A stretch of 64,000 bases of DNA, taken from IMG/VR virus record IMGVR_UViG_3300024308_000016, positions 62,001-126,000 of that record, one strand, 5' to 3'. Position numbers and translations under genes: made by a program. This document shows, piece by piece, positions 19,655-33,193 of this stretch (positions are counted from its first letter, which is position 1; each line of letters begins with the position of its first letter). Below the pieces are notes generated by a model. That model was not told where the DNA came from, ran no database searches, and saw nothing but the letters and a program-made list of their open reading frames with translations.

Positions 19655-20533
19655 TCAATCCGCCGGAGTCATCACGTACAGCGGGTAGCAGATGGCGTTG
19701 GTTGCGAATGCGTCCGTCAACGTGGCCTCCACCGCCGTCATGATGTACGGGCGTGCTCCGACAGGCGCTCGCAAGCGGTACAGTTTTCCGTCCTTTTGAG
19801 CCAGCACATAGTGGTTGGCATATGCGGGGATGGGCTGCTCCACCGAACGGATCATCCAGCCATTGAGGTTGGTGGGGCCGCCCGAGTTCTTGCTCCAGTA
19901 CTGCATGGCGTGGTCCAGATCCATCAGCTGGATCCGAAGACGAAATCCCTGGTATTCAAAGAAGACGCCGTCATTCAAGATGGATGCGACCGTTGTATCG
20001 AACGTCTGGCGCTGAGCAGCTGATGTGAATGTTCCGTACGTCATGAAGTCCGCTGGCATGAAGTACACCTTGCCACCGATGGTCAGCTTGGAGACCAGCG
20101 ATCCGTACTGACCGGGCACGATGGAGCTGGTGGTGCGGTTGAGTACAGTCAGTTGGGTGGACAGAGCCGAGAACAGCACCGAGTTCGACGCACCGAACAG
20201 ATCGGGCATGTTGGTAGCAGACGTGGCGTCCAGCATCCCTGACTCCATGGAGCCACGGGTGACATTGATGCCACCAGGACCAGCGGAGTTCACGTACTGG
20301 ATGGCGAGGATGGGCTTGGACTGCATGGTCCCCAGTGGAGTCAGGGACTCCACACCGTAGTAGTACACGGTGTCGGGTTGAATAGTCGTATCCTCGTAGT
20401 CCAGCGTCGTAGTGGCGAACTCCTGCAGCAGGTTGGCTGCGTCGAACAAGTTGGCCTTGGTGGCGCTTCGGTAAACCCGAAAGCCGGAGACGTTGCCGTT
20501 GTAGGCGTTCGCCCATTTGAGTTTGATAGACAT
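19655..20533 (-). CDS. virion tail/fibre protein, cassette 2 gene B
   Basis: FN3-like N-terminus (KLKW..FRVYRS..YYYGVE); AGPGG signature. Confidence 0.75.
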   Translation of the reverse strand: MSIKLKWANAYNGNVSGFRVYRSATKANLFDAANLLQEFATTTLDYEDTTIQPDTVYYYGVESLTPLGTMQSKPILAIQYVNSAGPGGINVTRGSMESGMLDATSATNMPDLFGASNSVLFSALSTQLTVLNRTTSSIVPGQYGSLVSKLTIGGKVYFMPADFMTYGTFTSAAQRQTFDTTVASILNDGVFFEYQGFRLRIQLMDLDHAMQYWSKNSGGPTNLNGWMIRSVEQPIPAYANHYVLAQKDGKLYRLRAPVGARPYIMTAVEATLTDAFATNAICYPLYVMTPAD

Positions 20534-20536
20534 TGT

Positions 20537-21535
20537 TTATTCCTCGATGAGTTGCAGCACAGGCCACAGAGCTGGAGCGCCACCATTACGCCACTTTGCT
20601 AGGATTTGGTCAGCGCTGCTCGAATTGTAGGTATTGACGATGTAGTAACCCTTCACCCAGTCGGCGACGATGGCGTAATTATGGTCGTAGACACCATACT
20701 CACACATCAGTGTCTCATTGGACTGAGGAAGGGCCTCAGCAGCAATGTACCTCATGAAGGTTACACCTTGAGCCCAGATCTGAGGAGTGACCGAACCCAC
20801 CTGGTTGCCAATGATGCAGCCTTGCATCATAGACTGGATGAGCTGGTTCATCTCGGTGTCGCGCTGCAGCGTCAGGGCCGCATTGTGTACACCGTTCCAG
20901 TTGTCTGGATATGCTCGGGGAGCACGCAAGTGAAAGCGGTCTATTCCCGCTGTCAAGATCTTGGTCTTGCGATAGGGGTTGTATTTGGCCGCCGAGATGT
21001 CGAAGTTCCAGTCCAGGCCAGAAGCAATACCAGGCACATTGGCCGCCCAGATGCCACCCAACCACGGATCGTAGTCGTTGTACGTGGTGGTCATGGGGAT
21101 AGAAGGCACATACATTATCTTGCCCTTGCGTACAAACTTGTACCACTTGAGCACAGCCATTGCGGCATTAGTCTTTCCACGCTCAAAGCCCAGAGCTGTC
21201 CACACATCAGGCAGCTCATAGCTGGGAACTTGGCCCATATAACCGAACTCGCTGTCGCCGGTGAGAATGTCTACGCCACCGGGACCTACACGGCGCAGGT
21301 TGGCTGTTACCGTTGGTCGCGAGAAGCTCGAGCCCAAAGGAGCGCGGATCTCCACCAAGTAGGCATACGTTTTGCCAGGTTCAGTGGTGTTGTCGACATA
21401 GGCGACGGCGTTAGAGTCCAGAGTAGCGATCGCTGTGCCTTTGCTGGCTTCAGTGATGGTGGTGCCCTCGTTACGGTAGATATACAGGGAGTTGCCAGGA
21501 GTGTTCTGGTTGCTCCATTTCAGATGGATAGCCAT
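20537..21535 (-). CDS. virion tail/fibre protein, cassette 2 gene A
   Basis: MAIHLKW; VGPGGVDILTGDSEFGYMGQV; ends WPVLQLIEE. Confidence 0.75.
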   Translation of the reverse strand: MAIHLKWSNQNTPGNSLYIYRNEGTTITEASKGTAIATLDSNAVAYVDNTTEPGKTYAYLVEIRAPLGSSFSRPTVTANLRRVGPGGVDILTGDSEFGYMGQVPSYELPDVWTALGFERGKTNAAMAVLKWYKFVRKGKIMYVPSIPMTTTYNDYDPWLGGIWAANVPGIASGLDWNFDISAAKYNPYRKTKILTAGIDRFHLRAPRAYPDNWNGVHNAALTLQRDTEMNQLIQSMMQGCIIGNQVGSVTPQIWAQGVTFMRYIAAEALPQSNETLMCEYGVYDHNYAIVADWVKGYYIVNTYNSSSADQILAKWRNGGAPALWPVLQLIEE

Positions 21536-21808
21536 GTCGTACCTCTTTATTCATTGCCGACGAAGATGCCGACCACATGATTCCGACCATAACCCTCTGA
21601 CCGCTCCCCGTAAAAGGAGCAGGCAGAGGTCAGGTATTATGCAGTATCCATGTCCTGATAAATGAAGGGTACAAACACCCCGCTGTCAGATAAATTTGGT
21701 AGCACGCGACTCTTAACTATGTTTCGGACCACAGTTGCAGAAGACAGGCTCAAGTCATCACTCCCGGGAATTTCGATATACAGCACTACTCTAATGAATG
21801 GAGGATTT

Positions 21809-22942
21809 ATGCAACTGTGGAACCGACATACGAGACCCAAGGACATCCAGGCGACCTATATCGGGCGCGGCACTCCTTGGGGCAACCCCTTCAAAGTAAC
21901 AGAGGAGCTCCCCCGAGGAGAGGCCGCCGCCGCTTATAAGAAAATGATCGCTGACAAGCTGGCAGTCGGTGATCGAGTGACTCGTCAGTTGGTCAGCGAT
22001 CTGGCAGGTGTGGACCACATCGAATGCTCGTGCGCACCCAAGCCCTGCCATGGGGATACCTTTGTGGAGATCTGGAACAATATCCGAGATCTGGGAAGTG
22101 ATGTGAAAGCCGGTATCCGTAAGTTCGTCAAAGAAAACGGCTACCCATATGGCCCAGATACCGATGGCTCGGACCATATCAACATCTACTCCAAGGCAGC
22201 CACCAGCCTAGGGAGGGCACTCACCAACATGAGCGCGATCCCTGTGGAGATCCCAGACCACGGCAAGTTCCCCAGTATGGAGAACTACTGGCACTGGCTG
22301 GCCACAGGCTGTCAGCATGAGCAGTTTCGTACGATCGGGCCCTTCGATGCCAAAAAGCTCTCCAAGACGCTCACTCGTGTTCCCCGAGATGACTTCCAAG
22401 AGTTGATCAAACAGGCTCTCATCCAGCGCTTTTACCAGGGCCCTCCGGCCCTTATCCGGGCATTTGTCAGATCTGAAAAGCCCCTGACCCACTACTACCA
22501 CTACGGCTCCGACGCTACTGTGATGTACACCTCCCATAACTGGTTGGTTGACTTCTTGACCGAGTACCGGGAGCAAAGAAAGAAGACCTGGTACAAGGTG
22601 GTCATCGCGGGCACTCGCAGGTTCACGGACTACTCATTGTTGCAGCAAGTGATTCAGGACTCCATGTATCCGATCACAGAAGTGGTCTCTGGTGCTGAGA
22701 AATCAGGAGTGGATGCCTTAGGCGAGCGCTATGCGGCGGACAACAACCTGCCTGTGCAAAGAGCGCCTGCCGACTGGGACACCCATGGGAGGGCAGCCGG
22801 CCATATCCGAAACGCCGAGATGGCCAAGTACGCAGACGCCGCTATTGTGATCTGCGTGAACCAGTCACCTGGATCTATGAACATGATCCAACAAATGAAA
22901 AAGCTCGGCAAACCGGTGCATGAGCATCACATCACGATGTGA
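21809..22942 (+). CDS. DUF4326 + NADAR-like + YspA-like SLOG three-domain protein
   Basis: YIGRGTPWGNPF..CSCAPKPCHGD (DUF4326); DHINIYSK..LGRALTN..GKFPSMENYW (NADAR-like); VVIAGTR..VVSGA..GVD..AAGHIRNAEM (SLOG); GGAGG before ATG 21809. Confidence 0.75.
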   Translation: MQLWNRHTRPKDIQATYIGRGTPWGNPFKVTEELPRGEAAAAYKKMIADKLAVGDRVTRQLVSDLAGVDHIECSCAPKPCHGDTFVEIWNNIRDLGSDVKAGIRKFVKENGYPYGPDTDGSDHINIYSKAATSLGRALTNMSAIPVEIPDHGKFPSMENYWHWLATGCQHEQFRTIGPFDAKKLSKTLTRVPRDDFQELIKQALIQRFYQGPPALIRAFVRSEKPLTHYYHYGSDATVMYTSHNWLVDFLTEYREQRKKTWYKVVIAGTRRFTDYSLLQQVIQDSMYPITEVVSGAEKSGVDALGERYAADNNLPVQRAPADWDTHGRAAGHIRNAEMAKYADAAIVICVNQSPGSMNMIQQMKKLGKPVHEHHITM

Positions 22943-23017: not shown

Positions 23018-23062
23018 CAAAGCGCTTCAGTTTGTTTGTTTCAAATAGAAAGGTATCCAAAC

Positions 23063-23413
23063 ATGAACCGTATATTCGACTTTCTGGTGCTCCCGCTTTT
23101 GGCCATCGCTGTGCTGGTTGGCATCTTCCTGTTGAGTGTGCAGTCACACGAATCATTCACCATCACTCCGGAGTGCGATGTCTATGCCAGCACGTACTTC
23201 AATGAGTATGCAGTTGACTTCTCGGCTGTTCGCACTGTCACGCGCTGGAACCACACAGCGCCGAACATGACAGGTGCCGATATCACGGCCCGCGTGCTGA
23301 TCGATGGCCGTATCAAGCAGTTCAAGGAAACCTACGCCCGTGAGGAAGCCGATGAACTGATGGCCCACTTTGCTGCTTGTCGTCTGAAGCAACAAGCCAA
23401 ACTTCTGAAGTAA
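23063..23413 (+). CDS. membrane-anchored or secreted two-Cys protein, paralog 1
   Basis: Hydrophobic N-terminus; FTITPEC...HFAAC; AATAGAAAG at 23044. Confidence 0.7.
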   Translation: MNRIFDFLVLPLLAIAVLVGIFLLSVQSHESFTITPECDVYASTYFNEYAVDFSAVRTVTRWNHTAPNMTGADITARVLIDGRIKQFKETYAREEADELMAHFAACRLKQQAKLLK

Positions 23414-23431
23414 ATAGAAAGGGATTCCAAA

Positions 23432-23833
23432 ATGAAGACTGCAGCTCAACTCATCCAAGAGTACATCGCCTCCAAGATCATGGCCAGCGAGAACCCGGAC
23501 ATCGAGATCATCGAGCGTCTACGTTTGTTTGCTCCGGATGACGGCATCACCGTGACCCAAGCCTGGGGTCAGGAAAGTCTCCGGCCATTCCTCGAAAAGG
23601 AAAAGCACTGGGTGGTGATGCTCTCTCCAACGCTCTCGCCTTACATGTTCGCTTACCGCAAGCTGCCCATAAACGCGCTCGCGATCTTCAGTGAGCGGGA
23701 CTTCACCCGTGTTGCCACCGACGGCCGCAACTTCGTGCGCAAAGCTATGGTGATTGGTCCGTCGATGGAAGGATTGAACCTGATCAACACGCTGGTTCGG
23801 ATGGGCAACCCTATCGCGAACCCCAAGCCCTAA
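23432..23833 (+). CDS. hypothetical protein
   Basis: AATAGAAAG at 23413. Confidence 0.75.
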   Translation: MKTAAQLIQEYIASKIMASENPDIEIIERLRLFAPDDGITVTQAWGQESLRPFLEKEKHWVVMLSPTLSPYMFAYRKLPINALAIFSERDFTRVATDGRNFVRKAMVIGPSMEGLNLINTLVRMGNPIANPKP

Positions 23834-23852
23834 ATAGAAAGCCCTCGTTATC

Positions 23853-24530
23853 ATGACTAAGATCGAAGAACTGCGAAAGGTATTTGCGAGCCGTCTGTTG
23901 ACCGCTCCTATCACCACGACCCCTCATGTCCTGCTCACATTGGACGAAGACAACAAGAACTACATGTTTATCCGTCGCGCTACTCCTAATAGTGCCAGGA
24001 GCTCATGCGGTAACGTTCGGATGCAGCAGCACTCAGTGCAGCTGATGGAGTTTCTCAAGCGTACGGGCAAAAAGCTCAACGACCCGAGTATCTCCGTTCG
24101 CATGGACATCGGCGTGACGTTTGAGGACCTTTTGCCGTACCTGACCGGGTATGGACGGTTCGCGACGTACCGTAGCTCCAAGGTCAAGGGGTCACCAGCT
24201 TCGATCGAGTCGACGATGACGATCTTTCAGCTTACCCACAAGAGCACCCAGCTGAGGTACTACTTGGGGCGCAATGACCGCATCAAGGAGCGCACGATGA
24301 GTCGCATCATCGGCCCAATGAAGCAAAACATCCTGGGCCGTATCAAAACGGCCGACCTATCACTGCATGCGGTGGCCTACGAGATCCTCAAAGGTCAGGG
24401 GGTCGACGCCTGGGACATCAAGATCTACGACAAGGACGTCCCTGCTGAGGACTCCTTGTGCACGGTCAGTGAACTCAACGGCGAGGCCAACTGTCACAAC
24501 CTCGCTATCTTGCAACTGTTTCATACTTAA
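23853..24530 (+). CDS. hypothetical protein with possible degenerate GIY-YIG domain
   Basis: AATAGAAAG at 23833; TIFQLTHKSTQLRYYLGRNDRIKER resembles the GIY-YIG core. Confidence 0.55.
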   Translation: MTKIEELRKVFASRLLTAPITTTPHVLLTLDEDNKNYMFIRRATPNSARSSCGNVRMQQHSVQLMEFLKRTGKKLNDPSISVRMDIGVTFEDLLPYLTGYGRFATYRSSKVKGSPASIESTMTIFQLTHKSTQLRYYLGRNDRIKERTMSRIIGPMKQNILGRIKTADLSLHAVAYEILKGQGVDAWDIKIYDKDVPAEDSLCTVSELNGEANCHNLAILQLFHT

Positions 24531-24539
24531 AGATCCTCC

Positions 24540-24782
24540 ATGAACGCTATCTCCTTGCCAGTGAGCGATGATTTCATCCTCCTGATAATCCCTCTGGTGC
24601 TAGTGACTGCACTTATCTATGTCTGGGTCTTCGACAGTGACCAAGAGGCCGAGTACCCGGATGTACCCATCTACGTGCAGATGGTCGATGGCATGCTGCG
24701 CATCTTCACCTCTTTGGCCACAGCCGGCTGGATCGCCATCATGATCGTACTCGCTGGCAAGGTTATCAAGTACGTCCTCTAA
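24540..24782 (+). CDS. small two-TM membrane protein
   Basis: Two hydrophobic stretches. Confidence 0.7.
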   Translation: MNAISLPVSDDFILLIIPLVLVTALIYVWVFDSDQEAEYPDVPIYVQMVDGMLRIFTSLATAGWIAIMIVLAGKVIKYVL

Positions 24783-24799
24783 TAGAAAGGTTTCTTATC

Positions 24800-25291
24800 A
24801 TGAACCGCCGTATCAAGCGCGCAGCTGCCATGGGCCGTCGTATCTACAACGCTTATGTTGCTCGCGACAAGGCCAGCTGGGATCACTTTGACTCGCTCAT
24901 CGAAGCGCGCAAGCGTATTATAGGCTATATCCTTGTCAACACAGGTGACACCCAGATGTGGGGCTACAGCTGGGGCCTGTGGGAGACCCATGGCTTTGAA
25001 GTGTTTTGCCCGGAGATGCCGCCCGTGTTCGGGGCCTTCGTCAACCACGCCATCGCGCAGATCAAAGATCGCAGGCTGACCGAGGATCCCAACATGATCC
25101 CCAGGAACCCAGAAGAAAAACGCGCCATCTGTCTGCTCACCAAGAGCCAAGGCCACGAGTTGCCGGTCAATGTGCATCTGCTGCGTGGTGACGACCGAGG
25201 CCGCGCGATGAGTCAGATGAACGTCTTCAAGCGCAACACCAATCGCAAGCAGCGCCAAGGCGTCAAGATCTTCATGATCACACCCGCATAA
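24800..25291 (+). CDS. hypothetical protein
   Basis: AATAGAAAG at 24781. Confidence 0.75.
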   Translation: MNRRIKRAAAMGRRIYNAYVARDKASWDHFDSLIEARKRIIGYILVNTGDTQMWGYSWGLWETHGFEVFCPEMPPVFGAFVNHAIAQIKDRRLTEDPNMIPRNPEEKRAICLLTKSQGHELPVNVHLLRGDDRGRAMSQMNVFKRNTNRKQRQGVKIFMITPA

Positions 25292-25380
25292 GGTCACCTG
25301 ACCCAAGCCCCCGCAACTATGGAGGCTTGACTCAGGACTCTTAACTCCTGAAACCCGCCCCTACACACCGAGAAATTACC

Positions 25381-25608
25381 ATGATCACTATTACTATCGT
25401 TACCCTGGTCATCGCGACTGCCCTTGCCTTTACTTATGTCCTCATCACCAACAAGGAACTCATCAACCAAATCTACGATACTACGGACTTCTCTGACTCG
25501 GCATCTCTGGGCAAGTTTGCCTTGGTGTCAGTGGGCGCTGCCTCGTCTATCACTACGTACGCAGTGATCGCGATCATCGCCATCTTCCAAATCTCGCGTT
25601 GGATCTAA
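25381..25608 (+). CDS. small two-TM membrane protein
   Basis: Two hydrophobic stretches; GAGAAA upstream. Confidence 0.65.
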   Translation: MITITIVTLVIATALAFTYVLITNKELINQIYDTTDFSDSASLGKFALVSVGAASSITTYAVIAIIAIFQISRWI

Positions 25609-25609
25609 T

Positions 25610-26011
25610 ATGAAAGTTCAAAAGCTCATGGACGTCTTCTTGTGGACGTTCATAGCCGTTATGATGACGGCTGGCCCATTTTTACCGCTTCTTTTTGTGT
25701 TCTACATCTTCAGCGAAGAGACCGCGATAGTGGGCCCCAGGCTTGCTATCGCGTATCTGGGTCCTTTCTTTTTTATGGTGATGGCAGGGTACTTGTACTT
25801 TGACATCACAAAGAAGTTCGACGAGATAGGTCCATTATTTGCCTACGTGAGATCTTTGCCCTCAGCGTGTGCTGTCGCTGGAATCATCTTCTTGAGCACC
25901 TTCAGCTATAACCTATCTCAATATGTAAGGAGTTCGAATGTCAGCAGCGTTTATCATCCTCCAGATGCAACGCGAACGCCGGCGCCGCCAGCGCGAGGAG
26001 GAAGAGGCTGA
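25610..26011 (+). CDS. three-TM membrane protein
   Basis: Three hydrophobic stretches; starts right after the upstream stop. Confidence 0.6.
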   Translation: MKVQKLMDVFLWTFIAVMMTAGPFLPLLFVFYIFSEETAIVGPRLAIAYLGPFFFMVMAGYLYFDITKKFDEIGPLFAYVRSLPSACAVAGIIFLSTFSYNLSQYVRSSNVSSVYHPPDATRTPAPPARGGRG

Positions 26012-26603
26012 GGAGCGAGCCCGTAAAAGCCGTCAACGGCCCGCGGACGAGTGCGCAAGGCGCTCGACAGCATCAGAGCCATCTGTTCCATCGATGGAAT
26101 ACCCCATAGGCGGAGGCGGTGAGTGCTCCTTCGGCATGGCGACTCAGCGTCCAGAGTGGTTGATCGAGACTGCTCGGGAATCCATCTTGGCCTCGACGGG
26201 ATTGCTCGAGGCCTATTATCGTGAACTGTTTGAAGAACGTGAAAAGGAGAAAGAAAGAATGAAGCGACGTGTTACCAACTTTTGGCGCAGCCTGATAGCT
26301 GGTGCCATGTGCCTGGGGATCGTGGGAGCGCATGCCGCGTCCTCATCTGCCACCATCAGCGATAACTGCGCTGTTCACTGGAAGGACGGTAAGGGCACGG
26401 AGTTCGTGTTCATGACCGGGATGCTGGAGGCGGTGAAGATCGAGAAACCCAACCTCCAAGGCTGGCAGACGGTCACGCTCATCGTGCCTCAGCACTCCCA
26501 GATGACGACGTCCGCTGTGGGCATGTGGCCCGAAGACGCCGTCGCTTTCCGCAACCGTTACATGGCCTGCTCCGGCATGGCCCTTCCGAAAGGTTTCAAA
26601 TGA
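25938..26603 (+). CDS. charged N-terminal region fused to secreted two-Cys paralog 2 (internal start at 26259)
   Basis: TAAGGAG before 25938; second RBS AAGGAG/AGAAAG before MKRRVT signal peptide; TISDNC...RYMACSG. Confidence 0.65.
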   Translation: MSAAFIILQMQRERRRRQREEEEAEERARKSRQRPADECARRSTASEPSVPSMEYPIGGGGECSFGMATQRPEWLIETARESILASTGLLEAYYRELFEEREKEKERMKRRVTNFWRSLIAGAMCLGIVGAHAASSSATISDNCAVHWKDGKGTEFVFMTGMLEAVKIEKPNLQGWQTVTLIVPQHSQMTTSAVGMWPEDAVAFRNRYMACSGMALPKGFK

Positions 26604-26950
26604 AAGCAGTTCCTAACTGGGTCATCATCGTGCTAGCGATGGTGCTGGGCCTGATGATCGCAAATACGGCCGAGGCCTTCGAGCGTACGCAGTTTCGGGC
26701 AGCTTCGGTGGAGATCACCAAAAACTGTATGCTGCGCATCTTCTACGAGGACAACCTCGATGTGCGCACCACCAACGTCACCTGGATCGAGTCTATCCGC
26801 ACCGTCCCCATGAAGTCAGGGATGTTGAAGGTGGAAGTGGACTTTGTGGCGGCGTCTACCTTCCAAAGTCCGGTCGCCGTGATGCCAGCAGTCGATGTTC
26901 AGCGGCTGGTGGAACGCTTTAGCCGCTGCTCTGGACTGGAACTCAAATAG
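26600..26950 (+). CDS. secreted two-Cys protein, paralog 3
   Basis: Signal peptide ending AEA; EITKNC...RFSRCSG. Confidence 0.75.
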   Translation: MKAVPNWVIIVLAMVLGLMIANTAEAFERTQFRAASVEITKNCMLRIFYEDNLDVRTTNVTWIESIRTVPMKSGMLKVEVDFVAASTFQSPVAVMPAVDVQRLVERFSRCSGLELK

Positions 26951-26960
26951 AAAGCCTTCA

Positions 26961-27512
26961 ATGTCTCAATCTTTCCAAGATCAAATCTATACGCTTCATA
27001 CGGACTACTTCCTGGTCCGGATCGTCGAACATCCGTCGATCTCTGCTGGACAGACATTTCTGGACAGCATTGCCGATGGGTTTAGTCGGCGCTTCACTGT
27101 ACCACCGGTGAAGGTGTCCGGGAACTTCGACAAGTTTGAAGTGCGGATGGACATCGGCAAGTCAATCATCGTCATGCTCCATGGTGACGTCAACACCAAT
27201 ACCCTGAAAGTGGTCGTGTTCGCTAAAAAGAGCGACCCGATCGCCCATTATGCTGGCTTTCTGGGGTATGTCTACGAAGGTATTCGTGGTGTGGTGGGAC
27301 CATCCTTCTTCATCCTGGCTGATATCGTCGACAATAACAGCTACGTCCGGCATGTCCGTAACCAAAACGAGATGATCGATCTGTGCGGCTTTTGGTCCAT
27401 CTCAGACTTCGGGGACGTCGAGCGTCACGTATATCCCTGCTATGCGGTGTATGCGCCGAGCGTGGAGGAGTCACCGATCATCGTCTTCTCGCCTCACAGG
27501 CCGAACCTTTAA
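26961..27512 (+). CDS. hypothetical protein
   Basis: AATAGAAAG at 26946. Confidence 0.7.
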   Translation: MSQSFQDQIYTLHTDYFLVRIVEHPSISAGQTFLDSIADGFSRRFTVPPVKVSGNFDKFEVRMDIGKSIIVMLHGDVNTNTLKVVVFAKKSDPIAHYAGFLGYVYEGIRGVVGPSFFILADIVDNNSYVRHVRNQNEMIDLCGFWSISDFGDVERHVYPCYAVYAPSVEESPIIVFSPHRPNL

Positions 27513-27521
27513 AGAGTTTTT

Positions 27522-27869
27522 ATGCACCCCTCTCTGAACATCCTGCGACGCGCAGTGATCGCCTCCATCGCGGCGGCGGTAGTATGTACCGGCTCTCTTG
27601 TCTCAGCCGCTGGCAACGTCGAAGACATCGAAGTCAACCGCAACTGCTTCGTGCTGTACCACAACGGCACGGACACGTACATCTACGGCGCCGGTACGTT
27701 CAACTATGTGAACGTCTACCCTGGCCGTGCCACGGATACGTACGTGATGAAGTTTTCCCATCACGCTCGTGACATCTCCCTGACGGTGTCGCGGCAAAAG
27801 GCCAAGGAAGTGCTGGACCGCTACTACGCGTGCTCCGGGATGGAGCTGGACAAGAAGGTTTTCCCATGA
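27522..27869 (+). CDS. secreted two-Cys protein, paralog 4
   Basis: Signal peptide; EVNRNC...RYYACSG. Confidence 0.75.
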   Translation: MHPSLNILRRAVIASIAAAVVCTGSLVSAAGNVEDIEVNRNCFVLYHNGTDTYIYGAGTFNYVNVYPGRATDTYVMKFSHHARDISLTVSRQKAKEVLDRYYACSGMELDKKVFP

Positions 27870-28300
27870 ACCGAGCTGACATCCATCTCAACGGCGTAGA
27901 CCTCGTGGAATTCGCCTCCGACGATCCCGCTACTCCGGCGTGCGTGGTCAAATGCCGCAAGCTCATTGCTCGCCATCTGAAGACCTTCAACAAGGTGGTA
28001 GTCAGCGAGCCCTCCGTTCGCTTTGCCTGGGTCGGCCGCAACTGCATTGGCTTTACGGTCGTCGCTGATATCGAGTACTTCGACGTCACACTCAACTACG
28101 ATCTGTCGGGCATGATCGTATTCGAGGGCGAATGGAAGATCATTGCGGGGCCTCAGGTCAATCCCGAGACGTTTGAGCCCTATCCAGGTCAACCCCTGCT
28201 TCGCCCCTCGGTTGAGGACGTGCGAGCGGTGGCTGAGACCTACCAAAAGCTGTTCGAGCGCCAGCTGCGCAAAGAGCGCACCATCGTTGCAAGGAGGTAG
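27866..28300 (+). CDS. hypothetical protein
   Basis: ATGA coupling. Confidence 0.7.
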   Translation: MNRADIHLNGVDLVEFASDDPATPACVVKCRKLIARHLKTFNKVVVSEPSVRFAWVGRNCIGFTVVADIEYFDVTLNYDLSGMIVFEGEWKIIAGPQVNPETFEPYPGQPLLRPSVEDVRAVAETYQKLFERQLRKERTIVARR

Positions 28301-28302
28301 CT

Positions 28303-28701
28303 ATGAGCTTTATGGCCAATGGGCCGATCTATATCTATGAAAAGCCTGATCCTCCCGGAGACCTGAGCTCCACAGTGGAACGGATCAAGGAGTTGATCGT
28401 TCGCCACATTCTTACCAACGATGTGGATCTGAACCCTCAGCACCTGCGCCTGACTTGGATGGGGCACAAGATGCTGGGGTTTGCTTACCTTCACGAAGAC
28501 CAATTGCAGGTGGCGTACAGTGGCTACTTGGTGCATACGCCGACAGGCTGGAAGATGAATGAAGGTAAGCCCTGCTCTCGGTTCAGCTTTGAGCCTCCCC
28601 AGGACATGCACACGGAAGCCTCTGACGAAGCCGACTTGGGCAAGCTTTACAACGCGCTGTTCGCAGCTGAGCTGCACGACCGCCTCGATAAGGCCATCTG
28701 A
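28303..28701 (+). CDS. hypothetical protein
   Basis: AAGGAGG upstream. Confidence 0.7.
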   Translation: MSFMANGPIYIYEKPDPPGDLSSTVERIKELIVRHILTNDVDLNPQHLRLTWMGHKMLGFAYLHEDQLQVAYSGYLVHTPTGWKMNEGKPCSRFSFEPPQDMHTEASDEADLGKLYNALFAAELHDRLDKAI

Positions 28702-28761: not shown

Positions 28762-29403
28762 TTAGCCTGGAGTGATGCTGAACCGCTTTATCCAGCCCTT
28801 CATGTTACCTCCGTGGCCGTTGGCCATAGAGAACAGAGCGCAAAGCTGATCGGATAGGTACGTCGAACCGATAGACTGTGTGTCTGTGATGTTTGATTCG
28901 AGCTCTCGGATTGTCATTGCCGACCCATCCCTGGTTATTCTCAACCGAACCAGTTTATTGGTTGGCGCGGCTCCCGGGAAGAACGATGTGGCGTGTCCTC
29001 CGCCGGCAAACGTCGCAAAGAATGCCCATAGCCATTTACCACCTTGGGTAATCTCGTACATGTTCCAGCCTAGTTTTGATTCGGATTGACTTCCAAAATC
29101 GAACAGTTGGGCATAGGTATTCTCTGTGACGTAGTCTATCTCCATGGAGAATTTACTCAGCATGAGAAGATTGAAGCGTTTGGTTGGTTCGAGAAATCGG
29201 ACGTTTCCATCCAAACGGTAACACTTTCCGTACGTGGGGTGATCGACGACACCGTCAGTGGGAGTGTTTTGGACAATTCGCTGAAAATTCCAAGTTTCCT
29301 TGGACTGAATATTCAATCCCAGTGTTCCGACGGGTACATCCTCGAATTGGATCAGGAAGTACGGGTTGGGATTGACATTCGTGGAAGAAAGGAGTTCGAT
29401 CAT
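28762..29403 (-). CDS. concanavalin A/LamG-like virion adhesin module
   Basis: Starts MIELLSS; FSMEID..QLFDFG..WLWAF..RLRITRDG..GWIKRFSIT pattern; lower GC. Confidence 0.6.
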   Translation of the reverse strand: MIELLSSTNVNPNPYFLIQFEDVPVGTLGLNIQSKETWNFQRIVQNTPTDGVVDHPTYGKCYRLDGNVRFLEPTKRFNLLMLSKFSMEIDYVTENTYAQLFDFGSQSESKLGWNMYEITQGGKWLWAFFATFAGGGHATSFFPGAAPTNKLVRLRITRDGSAMTIRELESNITDTQSIGSTYLSDQLCALFSMANGHGGNMKGWIKRFSITPG

Positions 29404-29550: not shown

Positions 29551-30462
29551 ATGGAATACACCAAAACAACAGCGATGGTGATGGTGGCCGCGATGGCCAT
29601 GACGGGATGCGGGCCTTCGGACAACGGCCCCACCTACGACCCCAGCGCTGCGGCGCGCAACATCACTAGCCAGATGGCTCACCAGCAAACCCAGGAAACT
29701 GCTCAGCTGCTCAAGGAACTGCAAAAGCTCGACCCCACGGTGCGTTCGGTGGACTTTGTGCTGGAAGACGGCCAAAAGACCATCCAGGTGGGTCGCGAGG
29801 CCGCTGATGGCAAACTGACCATCTGGGTGATGCCGCCGGCTGACTATGCCAAGATGGCCTCGGAGACCAACAGCAAGATGGTCGCTTCCGGTCAAGGTGG
29901 CGGCAACCCGGCCAGCCCCAACTCCCCGGCTTCGGGCGGCTATAGTGGCGGCGAGATGCTGATGAGTGCGGGAGCCGGCCTGCTCGCAGGTGCACTGATG
30001 GGTTCCATGCTCAGCAACTCCTCGGGCCGCACGGCATCGTTCACCAGCCCGCAGACCTACAACAGCTATCGCCAAGCGTCCACCAGCAGCTACCGCTCGG
30101 ACCAGCACCGCCAGAGCCTTCGTCGCGAGGATGAAGAGCGCCGCCGCAGCTCCCCGGCCGTAGGCTCCAACACCGCAGCCATGATGGCTGCGCAGCAAGC
30201 GAACATGTCCGGCGCCTCCAGCGCTGCAACAGCGGCCAACCGCTCCTCGGCCGCGACTTCGTCGTTCGCCAACAGCGCTCGTTCCATCTCCGGTGCTCCG
30301 TCTCCGGCAGCGGCGGCCACCAGCGTCAACCGCTCGGCCGCGTTCTCCTCGCCCAGCAGCTCGTACGCGAGCCGTTCGGCGTCGACTAGCCAAGCATTCA
30401 GCTCCTCTTCGGTGGGACGCTCTTCGGCAGGCGGCTTCTCCGGCGGTGCTAGCGCATCCTGA
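29551..30462 (+). CDS. lipoprotein, UPF0323/DUF1190-like, with S/A-rich tail
   Basis: Lipobox MTGC at residue 20; GGYSGGEMLMSAGAGLLAGALMGSML resembles Campylobacter Cj0371; low-complexity tail ending GGFSGG. Confidence 0.7.
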   Translation: MEYTKTTAMVMVAAMAMTGCGPSDNGPTYDPSAAARNITSQMAHQQTQETAQLLKELQKLDPTVRSVDFVLEDGQKTIQVGREAADGKLTIWVMPPADYAKMASETNSKMVASGQGGGNPASPNSPASGGYSGGEMLMSAGAGLLAGALMGSMLSNSSGRTASFTSPQTYNSYRQASTSSYRSDQHRQSLRREDEERRRSSPAVGSNTAAMMAAQQANMSGASSAATAANRSSAATSSFANSARSISGAPSPAAAATSVNRSAAFSSPSSSYASRSASTSQAFSSSSVGRSSAGGFSGGASAS

Positions 30463-30498: not shown

Positions 30499-31788
30499 AT
30501 GCAAGCTCCATTCATCAAGAAAGCCATCCTGCAGGTTCCTTTCCTGACGGTCGACGAGATCTTCGACCGCGAGATGCCGTTCATTGCGGCATTCAGCCAA
30601 GACCCGGTGTTCCGCAGCAACATCCACACCTGGATGGAGTTCTACGGCCGCAAGCAAGACGCACTGCCCTTCTACCAAGTCGACGCCCAGTGGGGCGAGC
30701 GGCTGCGTCAAGGTTTGACGCTGTTCATGGGCCAGATGCGTGGGGCACTGCAAAACCTCTTCGACACCAGCACGGACGAAGAACTCATGGCGATGTTCCC
30801 GATGCCGGGCGTGGAGCCAGCAGTGAACCTGGCGTTCGTGCAATACGCCCGTTACACGTTCGCCAAGGACCATCCCGCGTTTGGCGGCCGCTTCGATCTG
30901 CAGGTGGACCCCAACACGGGCAAGGCGTTCATCTACGAATTCAACGGCGACACGCCCGCGATGCTGTTCGAGTCGATGAACCTGCAAAACCTCTTTGCCG
31001 TGGTCAATGAAGACGAAGAAGCGCAGCTCAACGACATGTGGGTCAAGACCGAAGAGCGCGGCCTGGTGGACAGCTCCTCCAAGGTGGCCGTGGTGGTCAA
31101 CACCAACTGGCCTGAGGATCTGGGCACCAGCGAAGCCATCGCGCAACTGCTGGAGCAGTCGGGTGCTCAGGTCTTCCTGGCCGACATGACCATGTTCCAG
31201 TTCGACAGCGCAGGCGATCCGGACCGCAATCCCTTCTTCCTGACGTCGGTGCCGTCCACGGACCTGACACACGTGCACATTATGCTGCCGTGGGAGGAAA
31301 TGGTGCAGTCCAACCCGCAGGCCATCTCCCGTTGGCGTGAATGGGGTGACAAGGTCCGTTTCTTCGAACCGGCGTGGCGCTGGTTCATGAGCCACAAGAA
31401 GTTCCTGACGCTGCCTGAGCTGCAGACCTACGGCCTGGCGCGCAGCCATGCCAACTGGGCCGACTACCAGCTCGAGCACGTCACGTTGATCGAGACACCC
31501 AGTGTGGCCGAGGGCGGCTATGTGGCCAAGCCCCAGCTGGGTCGCCAGTCGGCGTCGGTCGTGGTTCATCGTCCGGGGCAGGCGCCTGTGACCAGCCGCA
31601 ACGACAACTACGTCGACTACCCGGTCGTGTACCAGCCCTACAAGGCTCCTGGCCAGATCGAAGGCGCCAACTTCATCGCCTGCATGTGGATGGCAGGTGA
31701 AGAAGCGGCGTCGCTGGCTTTCCGTGAGTTCGACGGCCAGATCCTGGATCTGGAAAATGAACGCGTGATCTTGCACGAACTCGTGTAA
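30499..31788 (+). CDS. glutathionylspermidine synthase-like ATP-grasp ligase (YgiC/YjfC/Cj0372 type)
   Basis: GRFDL...YEFNGDTP.MLFES, FEPAW...SHK, YVAKPQLGRQSASV, VYQ, LAFRE motifs. Confidence 0.85.
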   Translation: MQAPFIKKAILQVPFLTVDEIFDREMPFIAAFSQDPVFRSNIHTWMEFYGRKQDALPFYQVDAQWGERLRQGLTLFMGQMRGALQNLFDTSTDEELMAMFPMPGVEPAVNLAFVQYARYTFAKDHPAFGGRFDLQVDPNTGKAFIYEFNGDTPAMLFESMNLQNLFAVVNEDEEAQLNDMWVKTEERGLVDSSSKVAVVVNTNWPEDLGTSEAIAQLLEQSGAQVFLADMTMFQFDSAGDPDRNPFFLTSVPSTDLTHVHIMLPWEEMVQSNPQAISRWREWGDKVRFFEPAWRWFMSHKKFLTLPELQTYGLARSHANWADYQLEHVTLIETPSVAEGGYVAKPQLGRQSASVVVHRPGQAPVTSRNDNYVDYPVVYQPYKAPGQIEGANFIACMWMAGEEAASLAFREFDGQILDLENERVILHELV

Positions 31789-31867: not shown

Positions 31868-33193
31868 ATGGAAAAGATCGGCGACATCGTCAACAAGACA
31901 GAACAAGAAACTCAAGGCACTCCCGAGCAGCCGGTGCTGGGCGACATCCTCGAAAAGCTCGAACCTCTGGACGAGACCTTCCGTTTGGTAGGCGTTCAAG
32001 ATGCCGGCAGCTTCGATGGCTTTCAGCCGTCCAGTAGCGGCGACGAGTGCCTGACCGAACAGATCTTGGACGACCGCATCAAACGCCTGGAAGGCCTGGT
32101 GATGACTCCGATCCAGACGGCGTTTGCCACACAAAACTCCGCACTGGCCATGGAAGTGCGCAATCAGATCAAGCGTGCCGTGCAAAACTGCTTGATAAGT
32201 GGTCAGTACGGATCCGTCAGCGCCTTCAACAGCATCGAACAAGAGCTGAAAAGCGCTTTGGCTGTGCGTGGTGATGACGTGCAGCGGCGCACCACGCTGA
32301 TGGTGCAGTCCAAGAAGGGCATCAAACAGCTGCTGGTGAGCCAAAGCTACACCATCGCTGACGTCTACTCCAAGGACGGCCACTACCTGGCTACCCGGGA
32401 CATGAACGACACGATGACCACGCTGGTGGCTGTCCGTATCCCCCGGGTGTTCGACCACCAGCACGGCTCGGCCATTGAAGACGAGTTCACCCAGTGGGGC
32501 GAGCGGCTGTACCTGCTGCTGGAAGTGTCCATCCCGCTGAAGGAAGGCAATGCCGGCGTGTTCCTGGAATACATCGAGTCCAAGGACGACATCATCACCA
32601 ACCGCCTGCATCATCTTGCGGCTTTGATGATCAAGATCCTGCCCGATGAAGCTCTCCGGGGTTTCTTCAACCGCCACAACTTCAGCGCCGGCCTGTCCGA
32701 GTACGACAATCCCCGCGTGACCATCCACACCAAGCCGCATGTCTCCGGCTCGTGCACGGATACAGAGACCAAGCTCGTGGTGACTGCTGACCAGTTCAAG
32801 AAGGCCATCGAGGACCGCCTGTCCGGGATACCGGGCGTCAAGGTCAACGATATGTACTCCTGCGGGAAATCGTTGGTCTACCACTTCGTCAACAATAACG
32901 ACGATGTGCTGGCGCGTGCGTTCATCCGGGTGGACGACTCCATCACGGTCGCCACGGTATCTCACCGCGACACATCGGTGGAGTTGATCCATCGGTACCT
33001 GCGTGAGATGCTGGACCGGCTGCTGGCGGAGAACACTGGTAAGCTCAAGGATGTCGCCAACAAGAGCCGCGCACACGCCGTCGACACGCTGACGAAGTAC
33101 TACGCACTCACCAACCCCCGATGGCGTAAGATGCTGGGGCTGAAGCCCGTTATCACGGACAAGGACGACCGCCGTCTGCTGGGTTTGGACTGA
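31868..33193 (+). CDS. hypothetical protein
   Basis: 441 aa; AATAGAAAG at 31851. Confidence 0.8.
   Translation: MEKIGDIVNKTEQETQGTPEQPVLGDILEKLEPLDETFRLVGVQDAGSFDGFQPSSSGDECLTEQILDDRIKRLEGLVMTPIQTAFATQNSALAMEVRNQIKRAVQNCLISGQYGSVSAFNSIEQELKSALAVRGDDVQRRTTLMVQSKKGIKQLLVSQSYTIADVYSKDGHYLATRDMNDTMTTLVAVRIPRVFDHQHGSAIEDEFTQWGERLYLLLEVSIPLKEGNAGVFLEYIESKDDIITNRLHHLAALMIKILPDEALRGFFNRHNFSAGLSEYDNPRVTIHTKPHVSGSCTDTETKLVVTADQFKKAIEDRLSGIPGVKVNDMYSCGKSLVYHFVNNNDDVLARAFIRVDDSITVATVSHRDTSVELIHRYLREMLDRLLAENTGKLKDVANKSRAHAVDTLTKYYALTNPRWRKMLGLKPVITDKDDRRLLGLD

What the first reader, a model, noticed from the sequence alone, without database searches (positions are those of the whole stretch)
23063..27869. 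Four divergent exported ~115-aa paralogs with a conserved cysteine pair
23063, 26259, 26600 and 27522 each have a signal or anchor sequence, an early (I/V)xx(N/E)C strand, several beta strands and a final helix ending (R/H)(Y/F)xxC(SG). This suggests a PH-like fold closed by one disulfide. They are interleaved with three small membrane proteins in the P2 operon. Inference: a periplasmic effector family for superinfection exclusion, receptor masking or inhibition of envelope defences.
Basis: partly seen in the sequence, partly recalled or inferred. Interest (0 to 1): 0.6.

Follow-up and report, generated by a model that had tools for sequence, protein, structure and literature searches.

The report
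Exported PH-like two-cysteine phage protein family
A 272-kb jumbo phage encodes four small proteins that are predicted to be sent into the host cell envelope and to share a PH-like fold with two invariant cysteines; they form a new, rare family whose job, most likely binding something in the envelope of the infected cell, is still unknown.

Summary
The four ORFs are real genes under purifying selection (dN/dS 0.02-0.22) and are syntenic in two related metagenomic phage contigs.

B, C and D are true paralogs (BLASTP 3e-7 and 4e-4; a joint profile finds about a dozen relatives among 1.84 billion proteins). A is its own small family. It links to B/C/D only weakly by sequence (hhalign E 4e-4 to 7e-5, probability 34-64%).

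AlphaFold2 gives A and D the same six-strand plus C-terminal-helix architecture (pLDDT 79 and 86). For both models, all 50 best PDB matches are PH/PTB/FERM-F3 domains (Z up to 8.0-8.1).

All 20 family members have exactly two cysteines in the exported domain, 61-68 residues apart, at equivalent predicted positions. I could not measure the Cys-Cys distance because no coordinates are returned.

Corrections: B is most likely a 221-aa bitopic membrane protein starting at 25938, not 26259. A looks like an uncleaved signal anchor. Only C and D look like cleaved Sec substrates.

There is no Pfam, PHROGs or PDB sequence match, so the function is inferred only. I take them to be non-enzymatic periplasmic binding modules in a probable early-gene envelope block. 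Superinfection exclusion is plausible but untested.

The parts
23063..23413 (+). A (116 aa): N-terminal signal anchor (about 23 uncharged residues, no canonical -3/-1 cleavage site in the orthologs) plus a PH-like domain with Cys38 and Cys106
   Evidence: dN/dS 0.06
25938..26603 (+). B (221 aa, long form): charged cytoplasmic N-terminal region of about 115 aa, one TM segment (about residues 118-131, followed by a conserved A-H-A), and a periplasmic PH-like domain (residues 131-221, nt 26328-26600) with Cys144 and Cys211.
   Evidence: (conserved SD before 25938; N-terminal dN/dS 0.25)
26600..26950 (+). C (116 aa): Sec-type signal peptide (A-E-A then F) plus a PH-like domain with Cys43 and Cys110. 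Its start overlaps B's stop (ATGA).
   Evidence: dN/dS 0.02
27522..27869 (+). D (115 aa): Sec-type signal peptide plus a PH-like domain with Cys42 and Cys104. Its stop overlaps the start of the next gene (ATGA).
   Evidence: dN/dS 0.11
24540..24782 (+). m1: 80-aa protein with two hydrophobic segments
   Evidence: ortholog 41-49% identical in L003/L005
25381..25608 (+). m2: 75-aa protein with two hydrophobic segments
25610..26011 (+). m3: 133-aa polytopic membrane protein. Its poorly conserved tail overlaps the start of B.
23432..23833 (+). g2: 133-aa soluble ORFan of the block
23853..24530 (+). g3: 225-aa soluble ORFan, 59-60% identical in relatives
24800..25291 (+). g4: 163-aa soluble ORFan, first gene of the unit g4-m2-m3-B-C
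26961..27512 (+). g5: 183-aa soluble ORFan, first gene of the unit g5-D-g6-g7
27866..28300 (+). g6: 144-aa soluble protein, paralog of g7. A gene of this family follows the D-type gene directly in four genomes.
28303..28701 (+). g7: 132-aa paralog of g6 (BLASTP 2.5e-7)
29551..30462 (+). 303-aa predicted lipoprotein (lipobox M-T-G-C at residue 20) with a Gly-rich hydrophobic segment and a Ser-rich tail. It is conserved downstream of the D/g6 genes in relatives.
23044..23052 (+). AATAGAAAG motif 10 nt before the start of A. Further copies lie at 23413, 23833, 24781 and 26946 and head the units [g2], [g3 m1], [g4 m2 m3 B C] and [g5 D g6 g7].

Best explanation
A to D are members of a rare, clade-restricted family of jumbo-phage envelope proteins. 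Each is built on a minimal (~85-residue) PH-like domain of six beta strands capped by a C-terminal helix, placed on the periplasmic side of the inner membrane.

C and D are soluble periplasmic proteins with cleavable Sec signal peptides. A is tethered by an N-terminal signal anchor. B is tethered by a single TM segment that follows a ~115-residue charged cytoplasmic region.

Two invariant cysteines, one just before strand 2 and one 13 residues into the terminal helix, most likely form a periplasmic (DsbA-type) disulfide that staples the helix to the sheet.

The domains carry no conserved catalytic-looking residues. I take them to be binding modules. They are co-expressed with three small polytopic membrane proteins and a lipoprotein. 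The units are headed by a conserved AATAGAAAG element, probably the early promoter of the virion RNA polymerase.

The most likely role is to bind host or phage envelope components early in infection and so change the envelope of the infected cell. Exclusion of superinfecting phage or blocking of a receptor or entry route is the leading guess.

Shown: the genes are real and constrained; B/C/D are paralogs; the Cys pair is conserved; a PH-like architecture is predicted. Inferred: export, the disulfide, binding rather than catalysis, early timing, and the biological role.
For: - Genes real: purifying selection on all four and synteny in L003 and L005. The locus is intact, with no frame-disrupting indels, in an independent metagenome contig about 98% identical.
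- Family.
- Fold.
- Equivalent Cys positions: D mature C14 and C76 (helix 63-77); A mature C12 and C80 (helix 67-89). Exactly two Cys per exported domain, spaced 61-68 residues, in 20 sequences.
- Topology: positive charge before the hydrophobic segment and negative or neutral after it. A-x-A sites are conserved in C-type, D-type and B-type proteins.
- No enzyme family matches.
- Context: membrane proteins and a lipoprotein lie in the same block. The AATAGAAAG motif has 34 copies, all on the + strand. In 33 of them it sits 2-15 nt before an ORF start, none of them among the minus-strand structural genes. The phage encodes a multisubunit RNAP beta-like gene. Such phages have ~10-nt conserved motifs marking early promoters (PMC7598289).
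- The block evolves faster (34-60% identity to L003) than the flanking enzymes (74-78%). This fits host-interface genes.
Against: - No experimental or homology-based link to any function.
- Fold-match Z scores (at most 8.1) are in the range the tool itself calls 'middling'. Foldseek E-values are weak (0.02-0.1).
- The A model rests on four sequences, and its homology to B/C/D is marginal (probability 34-64%; best of 30 column shuffles scored 20.0 against 24.8).
- The Cys-Cys distance was not measured. The cysteines could instead form intermolecular bonds or bind a metal.
- No dedicated signal-peptide predictor was available.
- Gene-wide dN/dS shows constraint, not the diversifying selection often seen in exclusion or receptor-binding proteins.
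- The motif lies only 5-11 nt from start codons, so it may be a translation or leader element rather than a promoter. Early timing is then unsupported.
Confidence: 0.55

Rival explanations
1. Lysis control. The exported PH-like proteins and the small membrane proteins are holin, antiholin or spanin-like accessories. They would set lysis timing or sense superinfection, as T4 RI binds the periplasmic domain of holin T. The cysteines might form intermolecular disulfides, as in spanins.
For: The block has small 2-4 TM proteins, one bitopic and one signal-anchored protein, secreted proteins and a lipoprotein. This inventory resembles lysis cassettes. B could carry a periplasmic signal to its cytoplasmic region.
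Against: The only endolysin-like candidates (SLT domains) lie about 80 kb and 140 kb away, at genome 2431-2694 and 230108-230365. No match was found to the Phage_lysozyme, PG_binding_1 or Glyco_hydro_19 families anywhere in the genome. The predicted domains are beta-rich PH-like, not coiled-coil like i-spanins or helical like RI. None of A to D has a lipobox. No holin or spanin family hits were found. If the motif marks early genes, the timing fits lysis poorly.
Confidence: 0.12
2. Counter-defence or enzyme inhibition in the envelope. The domains bind and neutralise a host periplasmic or inner-membrane factor. Candidates are membrane-embedded anti-phage systems acting at the injection site, periplasmic proteases, or cell-wall hydrolases. 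On this reading they do not exclude other phages.
For: The structural and topological evidence is the same as for the best explanation. Envelope-located defences that act during genome injection exist (SNIPE, Kiwa: PMC13190303). Several diverged paralogs are compatible with several targets. The block diverges quickly between relatives.
Against: There is no similarity to any known inhibitor. The host is unknown. Proteins made after injection cannot protect the incoming genome itself.
Confidence: 0.15
3. A is not a paralog. The family has three members in this genome (B, C, D). A is an unrelated small membrane-anchored beta-plus-helix protein whose two cysteines and fold resemble them by convergence or by chance.
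For: BLASTP finds nothing between A and B, C or D. The B/C/D HMM scores A at 6.7 bits, E 1.1. hhalign probability falls to 34% without the hydrophobic N-termini. An unrelated fifth ORF elsewhere in the genome also meets the Cys and hydrophobic pattern.
Against: The hhalign alignment is end-to-end and colinear, with both Cys aligned. It beats the reversed control and all 30 shuffled controls. The order of secondary-structure elements is identical, and the second Cys has the same offset (13) into the helix. Both models recover largely the same PH-like PDB entries. A lies in the same conserved block, 2.5 kb from B.
Confidence: 0.3
4. Not exported. The hydrophobic segments are ordinary membrane anchors that leave the PH-like domain in the cytoplasm. 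Most bacterial PH (bPH) proteins are arranged this way, with the domain forming membrane-proximal oligomers.
For: The nearest structural neighbours in the ESM Atlas are bPH families. On my own knowledge (Xu et al. 2010, J Mol Biol), members of those families are commonly TM-anchored and cytoplasmic.
Against: The charge distribution follows the positive-inside rule for an N-in/C-out topology in all 20 sequences. The D- and C-type N-termini are typical short cleavable signal peptides with A-x-A sites. There are exactly two invariant Cys in the domain and no others.
Confidence: 0.07

Closest known systems
Bacterial PH (bPH) domain proteins (Pfam bPH_1 to bPH_7, YdbS/YdbT, YcxB; PDB 3HSA, 3DCX, 3B77)
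   Same: They share a small beta-sandwich capped by a C-terminal helix and are often attached to a membrane anchor. They are the nearest clusters by structure in the ESM Atlas (bPH_7, bPH_3/DUF7115, YcxB-like). They also appear in the PDB hit lists (3b77, 3hsa, 3dcx).
   Different: No sequence match to any bPH Pfam model, even at E up to 5, for any of 13 members. Here the domain has six strands. It is predicted to face the periplasm behind a signal peptide or N-in anchor, and it carries an invariant Cys pair. On my own knowledge, bPH proteins are generally cytoplasmic and lack a disulfide.
Eukaryotic PH / PTB / FERM-F3 / GRAM domains (e.g. Avo1/Sin1 PH 3ULB/3VOQ, MTMR6 2YF0, Rtt106 3GYO, SNX17 F3 4TKN)
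   Same: They are the best structural matches for both models: Z 6-8.1, rmsd 2.4-3.7 A over 72-84 residues.
   Different: Sequence identity is 3-15%. Those domains are cytosolic or nuclear lipid or peptide binders. No phosphoinositide-binding basic motif is evident here. The similarity is at the superfold level only and shows no function.
Phage superinfection-exclusion proteins acting in the envelope (T4 Sp and Imm, T5 Llp, phi80/N15 Cor, P1 Sim, HK97 gp15)
   Same: They are small, phage-encoded proteins targeted to the envelope by a signal peptide, lipobox or TM segment. They are non-enzymatic binders and are expressed before the late genes. This comparison rests on my own knowledge and HK97 gp15 as cited in PMC13190303.
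   Different: No sequence similarity (PHROGs and tblastn are blank). A to D are not lipoproteins. No fold match to any of these proteins appeared in the PDB searches. The exclusion function is untested here.
T4 RI antiholin / spanin components
   Same: These are membrane-tethered or secreted small proteins with a periplasmic domain. Cysteines matter in spanins (own knowledge).
   Different: The predicted fold is beta-rich PH-like, not helical or coiled-coil. There is no lipobox and no adjacent endolysin.

Membership tests
PH-like superfold (structural class) | Antiparallel beta-sandwich of about 7 strands closed at one end by a C-terminal alpha helix | tested here: met
   The AF2 models of D and A have six strands plus a C-terminal helix. 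All 50 top VIA-align rows for each model are PH/PTB/FERM-F3/GRAM/bPH domains, with Z up to 8.1 and 8.0 covering about 75-85 of 87-90 residues. Caveats: there are six rather than seven strands, the Z values are middling, and these are predicted models.
Pfam bacterial PH families (bPH_1 to bPH_7) | Sequence match to the family HMM above the gathering score | tested here: not met
   No bPH family was reported for any of the four proteins at E up to 1, or for any of 13 family members at E up to 5.
Sec (SPase I) secreted proteins | Positively charged n-region, 7-15-residue h-region, small residues at -3/-1 (A-x-A) | tested here: inconclusive
   A home-made rule check gave these results (alignments). 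C- and D-type proteins fit well (AEA/AKA, ISA/SAA/ALA). B has the A-H-A site but after an internal TM. A-type orthologs lack a canonical site and have 19-23-residue h-segments, so they are probably uncleaved anchors. No SignalP or DeepTMHMM was available.
Bacterial lipoproteins (SPase II) | Lipobox [LVI][ASTVI][GAS]C at the end of the signal peptide | tested here: not met
   A to D have no lipobox. The Cys residues inside the signal peptides of B, C-orthologs and D are not preceded by G, A or S in the right register. The neighbouring 303-aa protein does have one (M-T-G-C).
Disulfide-stapled periplasmic domain | The two conserved Cys lie within bonding distance in the fold and are oxidised in vivo | not testable with these tools
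   Model coordinates are not returned. Indirect support: the Cys pair is invariant in 20 sequences, each exported domain has exactly two Cys, and the positions are equivalent in the two independent models.
Known superinfection-exclusion families (T4 Sp/Imm, T5 Llp, Cor, Sim, SieA) | Sequence or fold homology to a characterised member, or a demonstrated exclusion phenotype | tested here: not met
   Homology: there were no PHROGs or Pfam hits and no tblastn hits in 50,697 phage records. None of these proteins appeared among the PDB fold matches. Phenotype: not testable here.
Spanins / antiholins | i-spanin: N-terminal TM plus a coiled-coil periplasmic domain. o-spanin: lipoprotein. Both lie in a lysis cassette next to the endolysin or holin. 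| tested here: not met
   The predicted domains are beta-rich. There is no lipobox. The SLT-domain candidates lie at genome 2.4 kb and 230 kb, not near 85-90 kb.
One paralogous family comprising A, B, C and D | Statistically significant sequence relationship among all four | tested here: inconclusive
   B-D scored 3e-7 and C-D 4e-4. A against B/C/D gave nothing by BLASTP. The HMM scored A at E 1.1. hhalign gave E 6.6e-5 and probability 64% with the N-termini, and E 4.2e-4 and probability 34% without them. The real score of 24.8 compares with a best of 20.0 in 30 shuffles.

The most novel reading that the evidence does not exclude
The block may encode a previously undescribed envelope-spanning phage system. 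It would be built from periplasmic, disulfide-stapled PH-like modules: two soluble (C, D) and two inner-membrane-tethered (A, B). These would act with three small polytopic membrane proteins and an outer-membrane lipoprotein. B's cytoplasmic region would couple a periplasmic binding event, such as the arrival of a second phage or envelope damage, to the inside of the cell. This would be the first periplasmic PH-domain family with a defined role, in an RNAP-encoding (phiKZ-type) jumbo phage. Almost nothing is known about superinfection exclusion or lysis control in such phages.
Probability: 0.1. Interest if true: 0.7.

Novelty: new variant of a known kind. Interest (0 to 1): 0.42.

Why it matters
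Jumbo phages that carry their own RNA polymerases have large blocks of genes with no known function. How they manipulate the host envelope is poorly understood. This covers exclusion of competitors, control of lysis and evasion of membrane-located defences.

This family gives a concrete, testable set of candidates. It consists of small, probably early, envelope-targeted binding modules with a recognisable fold and a simple Cys pair to mutate.

It would also extend the PH-like superfold to an exported, disulfide-stabilised form in bacterial viruses. PH-like domains in bacteria are usually thought of as cytoplasmic.

The practical value is limited for now. The phage and its host are known only from metagenomes, and the family is very rare: about a dozen representatives among 1.84 billion proteins.

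Tried and rejected
- **Family scans.** Pfam and PHROGs scans of A to D and of ten neighbours found nothing beyond DUF4326/YAcAr in the upstream gene and a virion-protein PHROG on the minus-strand gene 28762-29403.
- **Sequence searches.** tblastn of B and D against 50,697 phage records found no match. Megablast of 10 kb gave only a 64-bp hit. The word-index protein search with D found only itself. The pattern scan of IMG/VR with the B/C/D alignment found no confirmed relative. The PDB sequence profile search found nothing.
- **Giant repeat proteins.** The big profile search also listed giant repeat proteins (P0010, P0014-16). I rejected them as compositional or repeat matches. P0010 is a Thr/Ser/Cys-rich tandem-repeat protein without Pfam domains, and P0015 is an LRR/PKD/Y_Y_Y protein.
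- **Ea35-70.** The region around the DUF4326 homolog of Erwinia phage Ea35-70 is not syntenic.
- **BFVD fold search.** It gave only weak hits to uncharacterised proteins.
- **ESM Atlas.** The feature search for D found no usable hit. The search with g7 rested on a low-confidence model and gave nothing.
- **Complex prediction.** Complex prediction of the B and C periplasmic domains returned no verdict (score 0.08, mark 0.32).
- **Read laying.** Contigs from four runs confirmed an intact, about 98% identical locus. The printed variant table stops at 25858, so I could make no per-gene polymorphism analysis of B, C and D.
- **Fifth candidate.** A fifth ORF with the same Cys and signal pattern (genome 50783-51118) shows no profile similarity to either family. 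I did not add it.
- **Lysis families.** Searches for lysis enzymes next to the block were negative.
- **Literature.** Searches found no description of phage periplasmic PH-like proteins.
- **Rejected idea, P0020.** P0020 looks like a B-C fusion and could have served as a Rosetta-stone link. It is a single 710-bp contig, and the fusion would put C on the wrong side of the membrane. It is more likely an assembly error or a deletion variant.

Full report
**Setting**

The window is bases 62,001-126,000 of a 272,393-bp virus record from IMG/VR that CheckV rates as complete. The phage carries a multisubunit RNA polymerase beta-like gene at the end of the window. It also has a weak beta-prime-like match. 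It therefore belongs among the RNAP-encoding jumbo phages.

No cultured phage is close. Megablast of 10 kb found only a 64-bp hit. The neighbouring glutathionylspermidine-synthase-like gene is 32-35% identical to genes of Pseudomonas phages and Delftia phage PhiW-14. The upstream DUF4326/YAcAr gene is 33-40% identical to genes of Erwinia, Salmonella and Pseudomonas phages. A Gram-negative (proteobacterial) host is therefore likely but not shown.

**The observation**

The four ORFs are present as described:

| Name | Coordinates | Length |
|---|---|---|
| A | 23063-23413 | 116 aa |
| C | 26600-26950 | 116 aa |
| D | 27522-27869 | 115 aa |

Each has a hydrophobic segment ahead of the domain. Each has an I-x-x-(N/E)-C motif, and a C-terminal (R/H)(Y/F)-x-A-C motif.

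BLASTP relates B to D (3e-7) and C to D (4e-4). It does not relate B to C, or A to any of the others. A profile of B, C and D run over every six-frame ORF of the whole genome scores those three at 1e-38 to 1e-43. Nothing else is significant, and A is second among the noise hits (6.7 bits, E 1.1).

I also scanned all 1,776 Met-initiated ORFs of 85-240 aa in the genome with a simple pattern. The pattern needs a hydrophobic segment shortly before the first of two last cysteines, the two cysteines 58-72 residues apart, and the last one 5-14 residues from the C-terminus. It matches five loci, and four of them are A to D. The arrangement is therefore well beyond chance.

The three interleaved small membrane proteins are also confirmed. 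They lie at 24540-24782, 25381-25608 and 25610-26011.

**Relatives and gene reality**

The following searches found nothing for these proteins:
- Pfam and PHROGs
- tblastn against 50,697 phage records
- the word-index protein search
- a pattern scan of IMG/VR

Because the claim rests partly on rarity, I ran the exhaustive HMMER search of 1.84 billion representatives with the B/C/D profile. It returned only seven small relatives besides the window's own proteins. Two are B-like (207 and 195 aa), one is C-like (117 aa), and four are D-like or intermediate (102-109 aa). It also returned four giant repeat proteins. I reject those as compositional matches. A second word search with the enlarged alignment added four more B-like sequences. 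A has three orthologs of its own.

Two contigs carry the whole block in the same order. L003 comes from a 182.5-kb contig and L005 from a 38.9-kb contig. The order is DUF4326/YAcAr, A, two soluble ORFs, m1, a soluble ORF, m2, m3, B, C, a 180-aa ORF, D, two g6/g7-type ORFs, a lipoprotein, and GSP synthase.

Amino-acid identity between the window and L003:

| Gene | Identity |
|---|---|
| A | 51% |
| B | 38% |
| C | 51% |
| D | 45% |
| Flanking enzymes | 74-78% |

The block therefore evolves fast.

dN/dS between the two closer relatives, L003 and L005:

| Gene | dN/dS |
|---|---|
| A | 0.06 |
| B | 0.22 |
| C | 0.02 |
| D | 0.11 |

All four are therefore translated genes under purifying selection.

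Contigs from other studies hold near-identical sequence. One 27.6-kb contig from an independent study covers the whole stretch. It has 99 substitutions and a single 1-nt insertion, which lies in the g5-D spacer.

**Correcting B and refining topology**

All B-type relatives were called as long proteins. Their N-terminal regions are conserved: an M-S-x-x-A-x-I start, an Arg/Glu-rich stretch, a P-(I/V)-G-G-G-G-E motif and an A-(R/K)-E-S-I motif.

- The window has GTAAGGAG 7 nt before the ATG at 25938. L003, L005 and L006 have AAGGAA at the same place.
- L003 and L005 have no comparable Shine-Dalgarno sequence before the internal Met.
- One ortholog (P0007) has no Met at that position at all.
- The N-terminal 97 codons have dN/dS 0.25.

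B is therefore most likely a 221-aa bitopic protein running from 25938 to 26603. It has a charged cytoplasmic region, one TM segment and the PH-like domain outside. A conserved A-H-A follows the TM, so cleavage there remains possible.

In all 20 sequences the charge before the hydrophobic segment is positive, and after it neutral or negative. This predicts an N-in/C-out orientation.

- C- and D-type proteins have short, typical signal peptides with A-x-A sites.
- A-type proteins have 19-23-residue hydrophobic segments, and their orthologs lack a canonical cleavage site. They are probably signal anchors.
- None of the four has a lipobox.

I had no dedicated signal-peptide predictor, so export remains an inference from sequence rules.

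**Fold**

AlphaFold2 on the mature part of D, with a 17-row alignment, gave pLDDT 86.1 and pTM 0.75. The model has strands at 6-10, 15-20, 23-28, 34-39, 45-51 and 56-62, and a helix at 63-77. The mature part of A, with only four rows, gave pLDDT 79.1 and pTM 0.67. It has the same order of elements: six strands, then a helix at 67-89.

- Foldseek against the PDB puts the Avo1 PH domain first for both models, though with weak E-values of 0.02 and 0.11.
- The exhaustive VIA-align search gives best Z of 8.1 for D and 8.0 for A.
- More tellingly, every one of the 50 listed rows for each model is a PH, PTB, FERM-F3, GRAM, RanBD or bacterial PH domain. Many entries are shared between the two lists (3ulb, 3voq, 4tkn, 3u12, 2yf0, 4khb, 1zc4).
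- The ESM Atlas neighbours of D's own Atlas model are bPH_7, bPH_3/DUF7115, YcxB-like and helicase-IV N-terminal clusters.

The tool warns that Z below 8 can reflect a common arrangement only. No sequence model of any bPH family matches.

**The cysteines**

In D's model the first Cys (mature residue 14) sits one residue before strand 2. The second (76) sits 13 residues into the helix. In A's independent model the first (12) sits two residues before strand 2, and the second (80) again sits 13 residues into the helix.

Every family member has exactly two Cys in the exported part, spaced 61-68 residues apart. Any other Cys lies in the signal or TM segment, or in B's cytoplasmic region.

This pattern is what an intramolecular periplasmic disulfide would give. 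Intermolecular bonds or metal binding are not excluded.

**Is A a paralog?**

Profile-profile comparison of the A family with the B/C/D family gives E 6.6e-5 and probability 64% over 79 columns, with both Cys aligned. Without the hydrophobic N-termini it gives E 4.2e-4, probability 34% and score 24.8. The reversed control scores 10.2, and the best of 30 column shuffles scores 20.0.

Taking this with the matching architecture, the equivalent Cys positions and the location in the same conserved block, I put distant homology at roughly two in three.

**Expression context**

The 9-mer AATAGAAAG occurs 16 times in the window, against 0.18 expected. It occurs 34 times in the genome, always on the + strand. 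In 33 of the 34 cases it lies 2-15 nt before an ORF start, usually 5-11 nt before an ATG.

It heads the units [A], [g2], [g3 m1], [g4 m2 m3 B C] and [g5 D g6 g7]. It is absent from the minus-strand structural genes. It is conserved at two equivalent sites in L003 and L005.

A review of RNAP-encoding jumbo phages states that each has a ~10-nt conserved motif upstream of early operons. This motif is the early promoter of the virion RNAP (PMC7598289). The motif here fits that description. Its tight spacing to start codons means a leader or ribosome-binding role cannot be excluded.

**Function**

Nothing links these proteins to a known activity. The invariant positions are few: I, C, R, A, C, S, G and L. 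They cluster in the C-terminal R-(Y/F)-x-A-C-S-G-M-x-L motif. That looks structural or like a binding surface rather than catalytic.

PH-like domains are binding modules. The block also encodes three small polytopic membrane proteins and a lipoprotein. The g6/g7 gene family is translationally coupled to the D-type gene in four genomes.

The candidate endolysin-like SLT domains lie far away. This weakens a lysis-cassette reading.

I therefore commit to non-enzymatic periplasmic binding modules used early in infection to alter the envelope. Superinfection exclusion or entry blocking is the leading role, at perhaps 30-35% on its own. Counter-defence or enzyme inhibition, and lysis control, are the rivals.

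Gene-wide dN/dS shows constraint rather than an arms-race signature. This does not favour any of these options. The one complex prediction I ran (B domain with C) gave no verdict and is not evidence either way.

**Verdict**

This is a real, conserved and very rare sequence family. It is new by sequence, it is predicted to be a periplasmic, Cys-stapled variant of the PH-like superfold, and it sits in a jumbo-phage envelope gene block.

Noticed in passing
window 11645, 23044, 23413, 23833, 24781, 26946, 30485, 31851, 34669, 35244, 36520, 45517, 51153, 52996, 54606, 55499 (all + strand): The exact 9-mer AATAGAAAG has 16 copies in the window (0.18 expected) and 34 in the genome, none on the minus strand. 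In 33 of the 34 copies it lies 2-15 nt upstream of an ORF start. It is often preceded by a T-rich tract and C-T-(A/C). It may be the early (virion RNAP) promoter of this RNAP-encoding jumbo phage, or a leader or RBS element. Two sites are conserved in L003 and L005.
   Followed up: partly
window 30499-31788, 31868-33193, 33258-34517 (+): A glutathionylspermidine-synthase-like (ATP-grasp) gene is 32-35% identical to genes of PhiW-14 and Pseudomonas phages. PhiW-14 has putrescinyl-thymine DNA (own knowledge). Two ORFan genes of similar size follow it, and these diverge strongly between relatives (18-23% identity). This may be a DNA hypermodification module.
   Followed up: partly
G000:C1:50783-51118 (+), 11 kb upstream of the window: A fifth small (111 aa) ORF has a textbook signal peptide and two Cys 58 residues apart, the last 8 residues from the C-terminus. 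It has no profile similarity to either family.
   Followed up: partly
window 21662-22942 (+): A 426-aa fusion of DUF4326 with a YAcAr/SLOG domain sits directly upstream of the block. It is 74-76% identical in L003 and L005 and is widespread in jumbo and other phages.
   Followed up: partly
window 27866-28300 and 28303-28701 (+): g6 and g7 are tandem paralogs (BLASTP 2.5e-7). A gene of this family follows the D-type gene directly in four genomes, with the start codon overlapping D's stop. Function unknown. The Atlas model has low confidence.
   Followed up: partly
window 27512-27591 (start of D): Contigs of two otherwise near-identical strains (runs X4 and X6) stop aligning exactly over D's signal-peptide region. 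Run X2 has a 1-nt insertion in the g5-D spacer at 27516. This is a local hypervariable spot.
   Followed up: no
L006:1-294 and 886-1464; P0020: In one short relative contig the B ortholog is preceded by an ORF that has a B-like N-terminal region and a TM but no PH-like domain. It is followed by an unrelated 192-aa ORF instead of C. Another 710-bp contig encodes an apparent in-frame B-C fusion.
   Followed up: no
window 29551-30462 (+): A 303-aa predicted lipoprotein has a lipobox Cys at residue 20, a Gly-zipper-like hydrophobic segment near residue 140 and a long Ser/Ala-rich tail. It is 66-67% identical in relatives and has no Pfam match.
   Followed up: partly
window 62526-63998 (+); G000:C1:2431-2694 and 230108-230365: An RNAP beta-like gene lies at the window's end. 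Two SLT lytic-transglycosylase domains occur elsewhere in the genome. One is in a 249-aa ORF (candidate endolysin) and one in a 2,519-aa ORF (probably a virion-associated lysin).
   Followed up: no
window 19655-20533 and 20537-21535 (-): Two adjacent minus-strand ORFs begin with similar fibronectin-like N-termini (I-x-L-K-W ... Y-R). They lie next to genes matching virion-structural PHROGs. They are probably tail-fibre or decoration paralogs.
   Followed up: no
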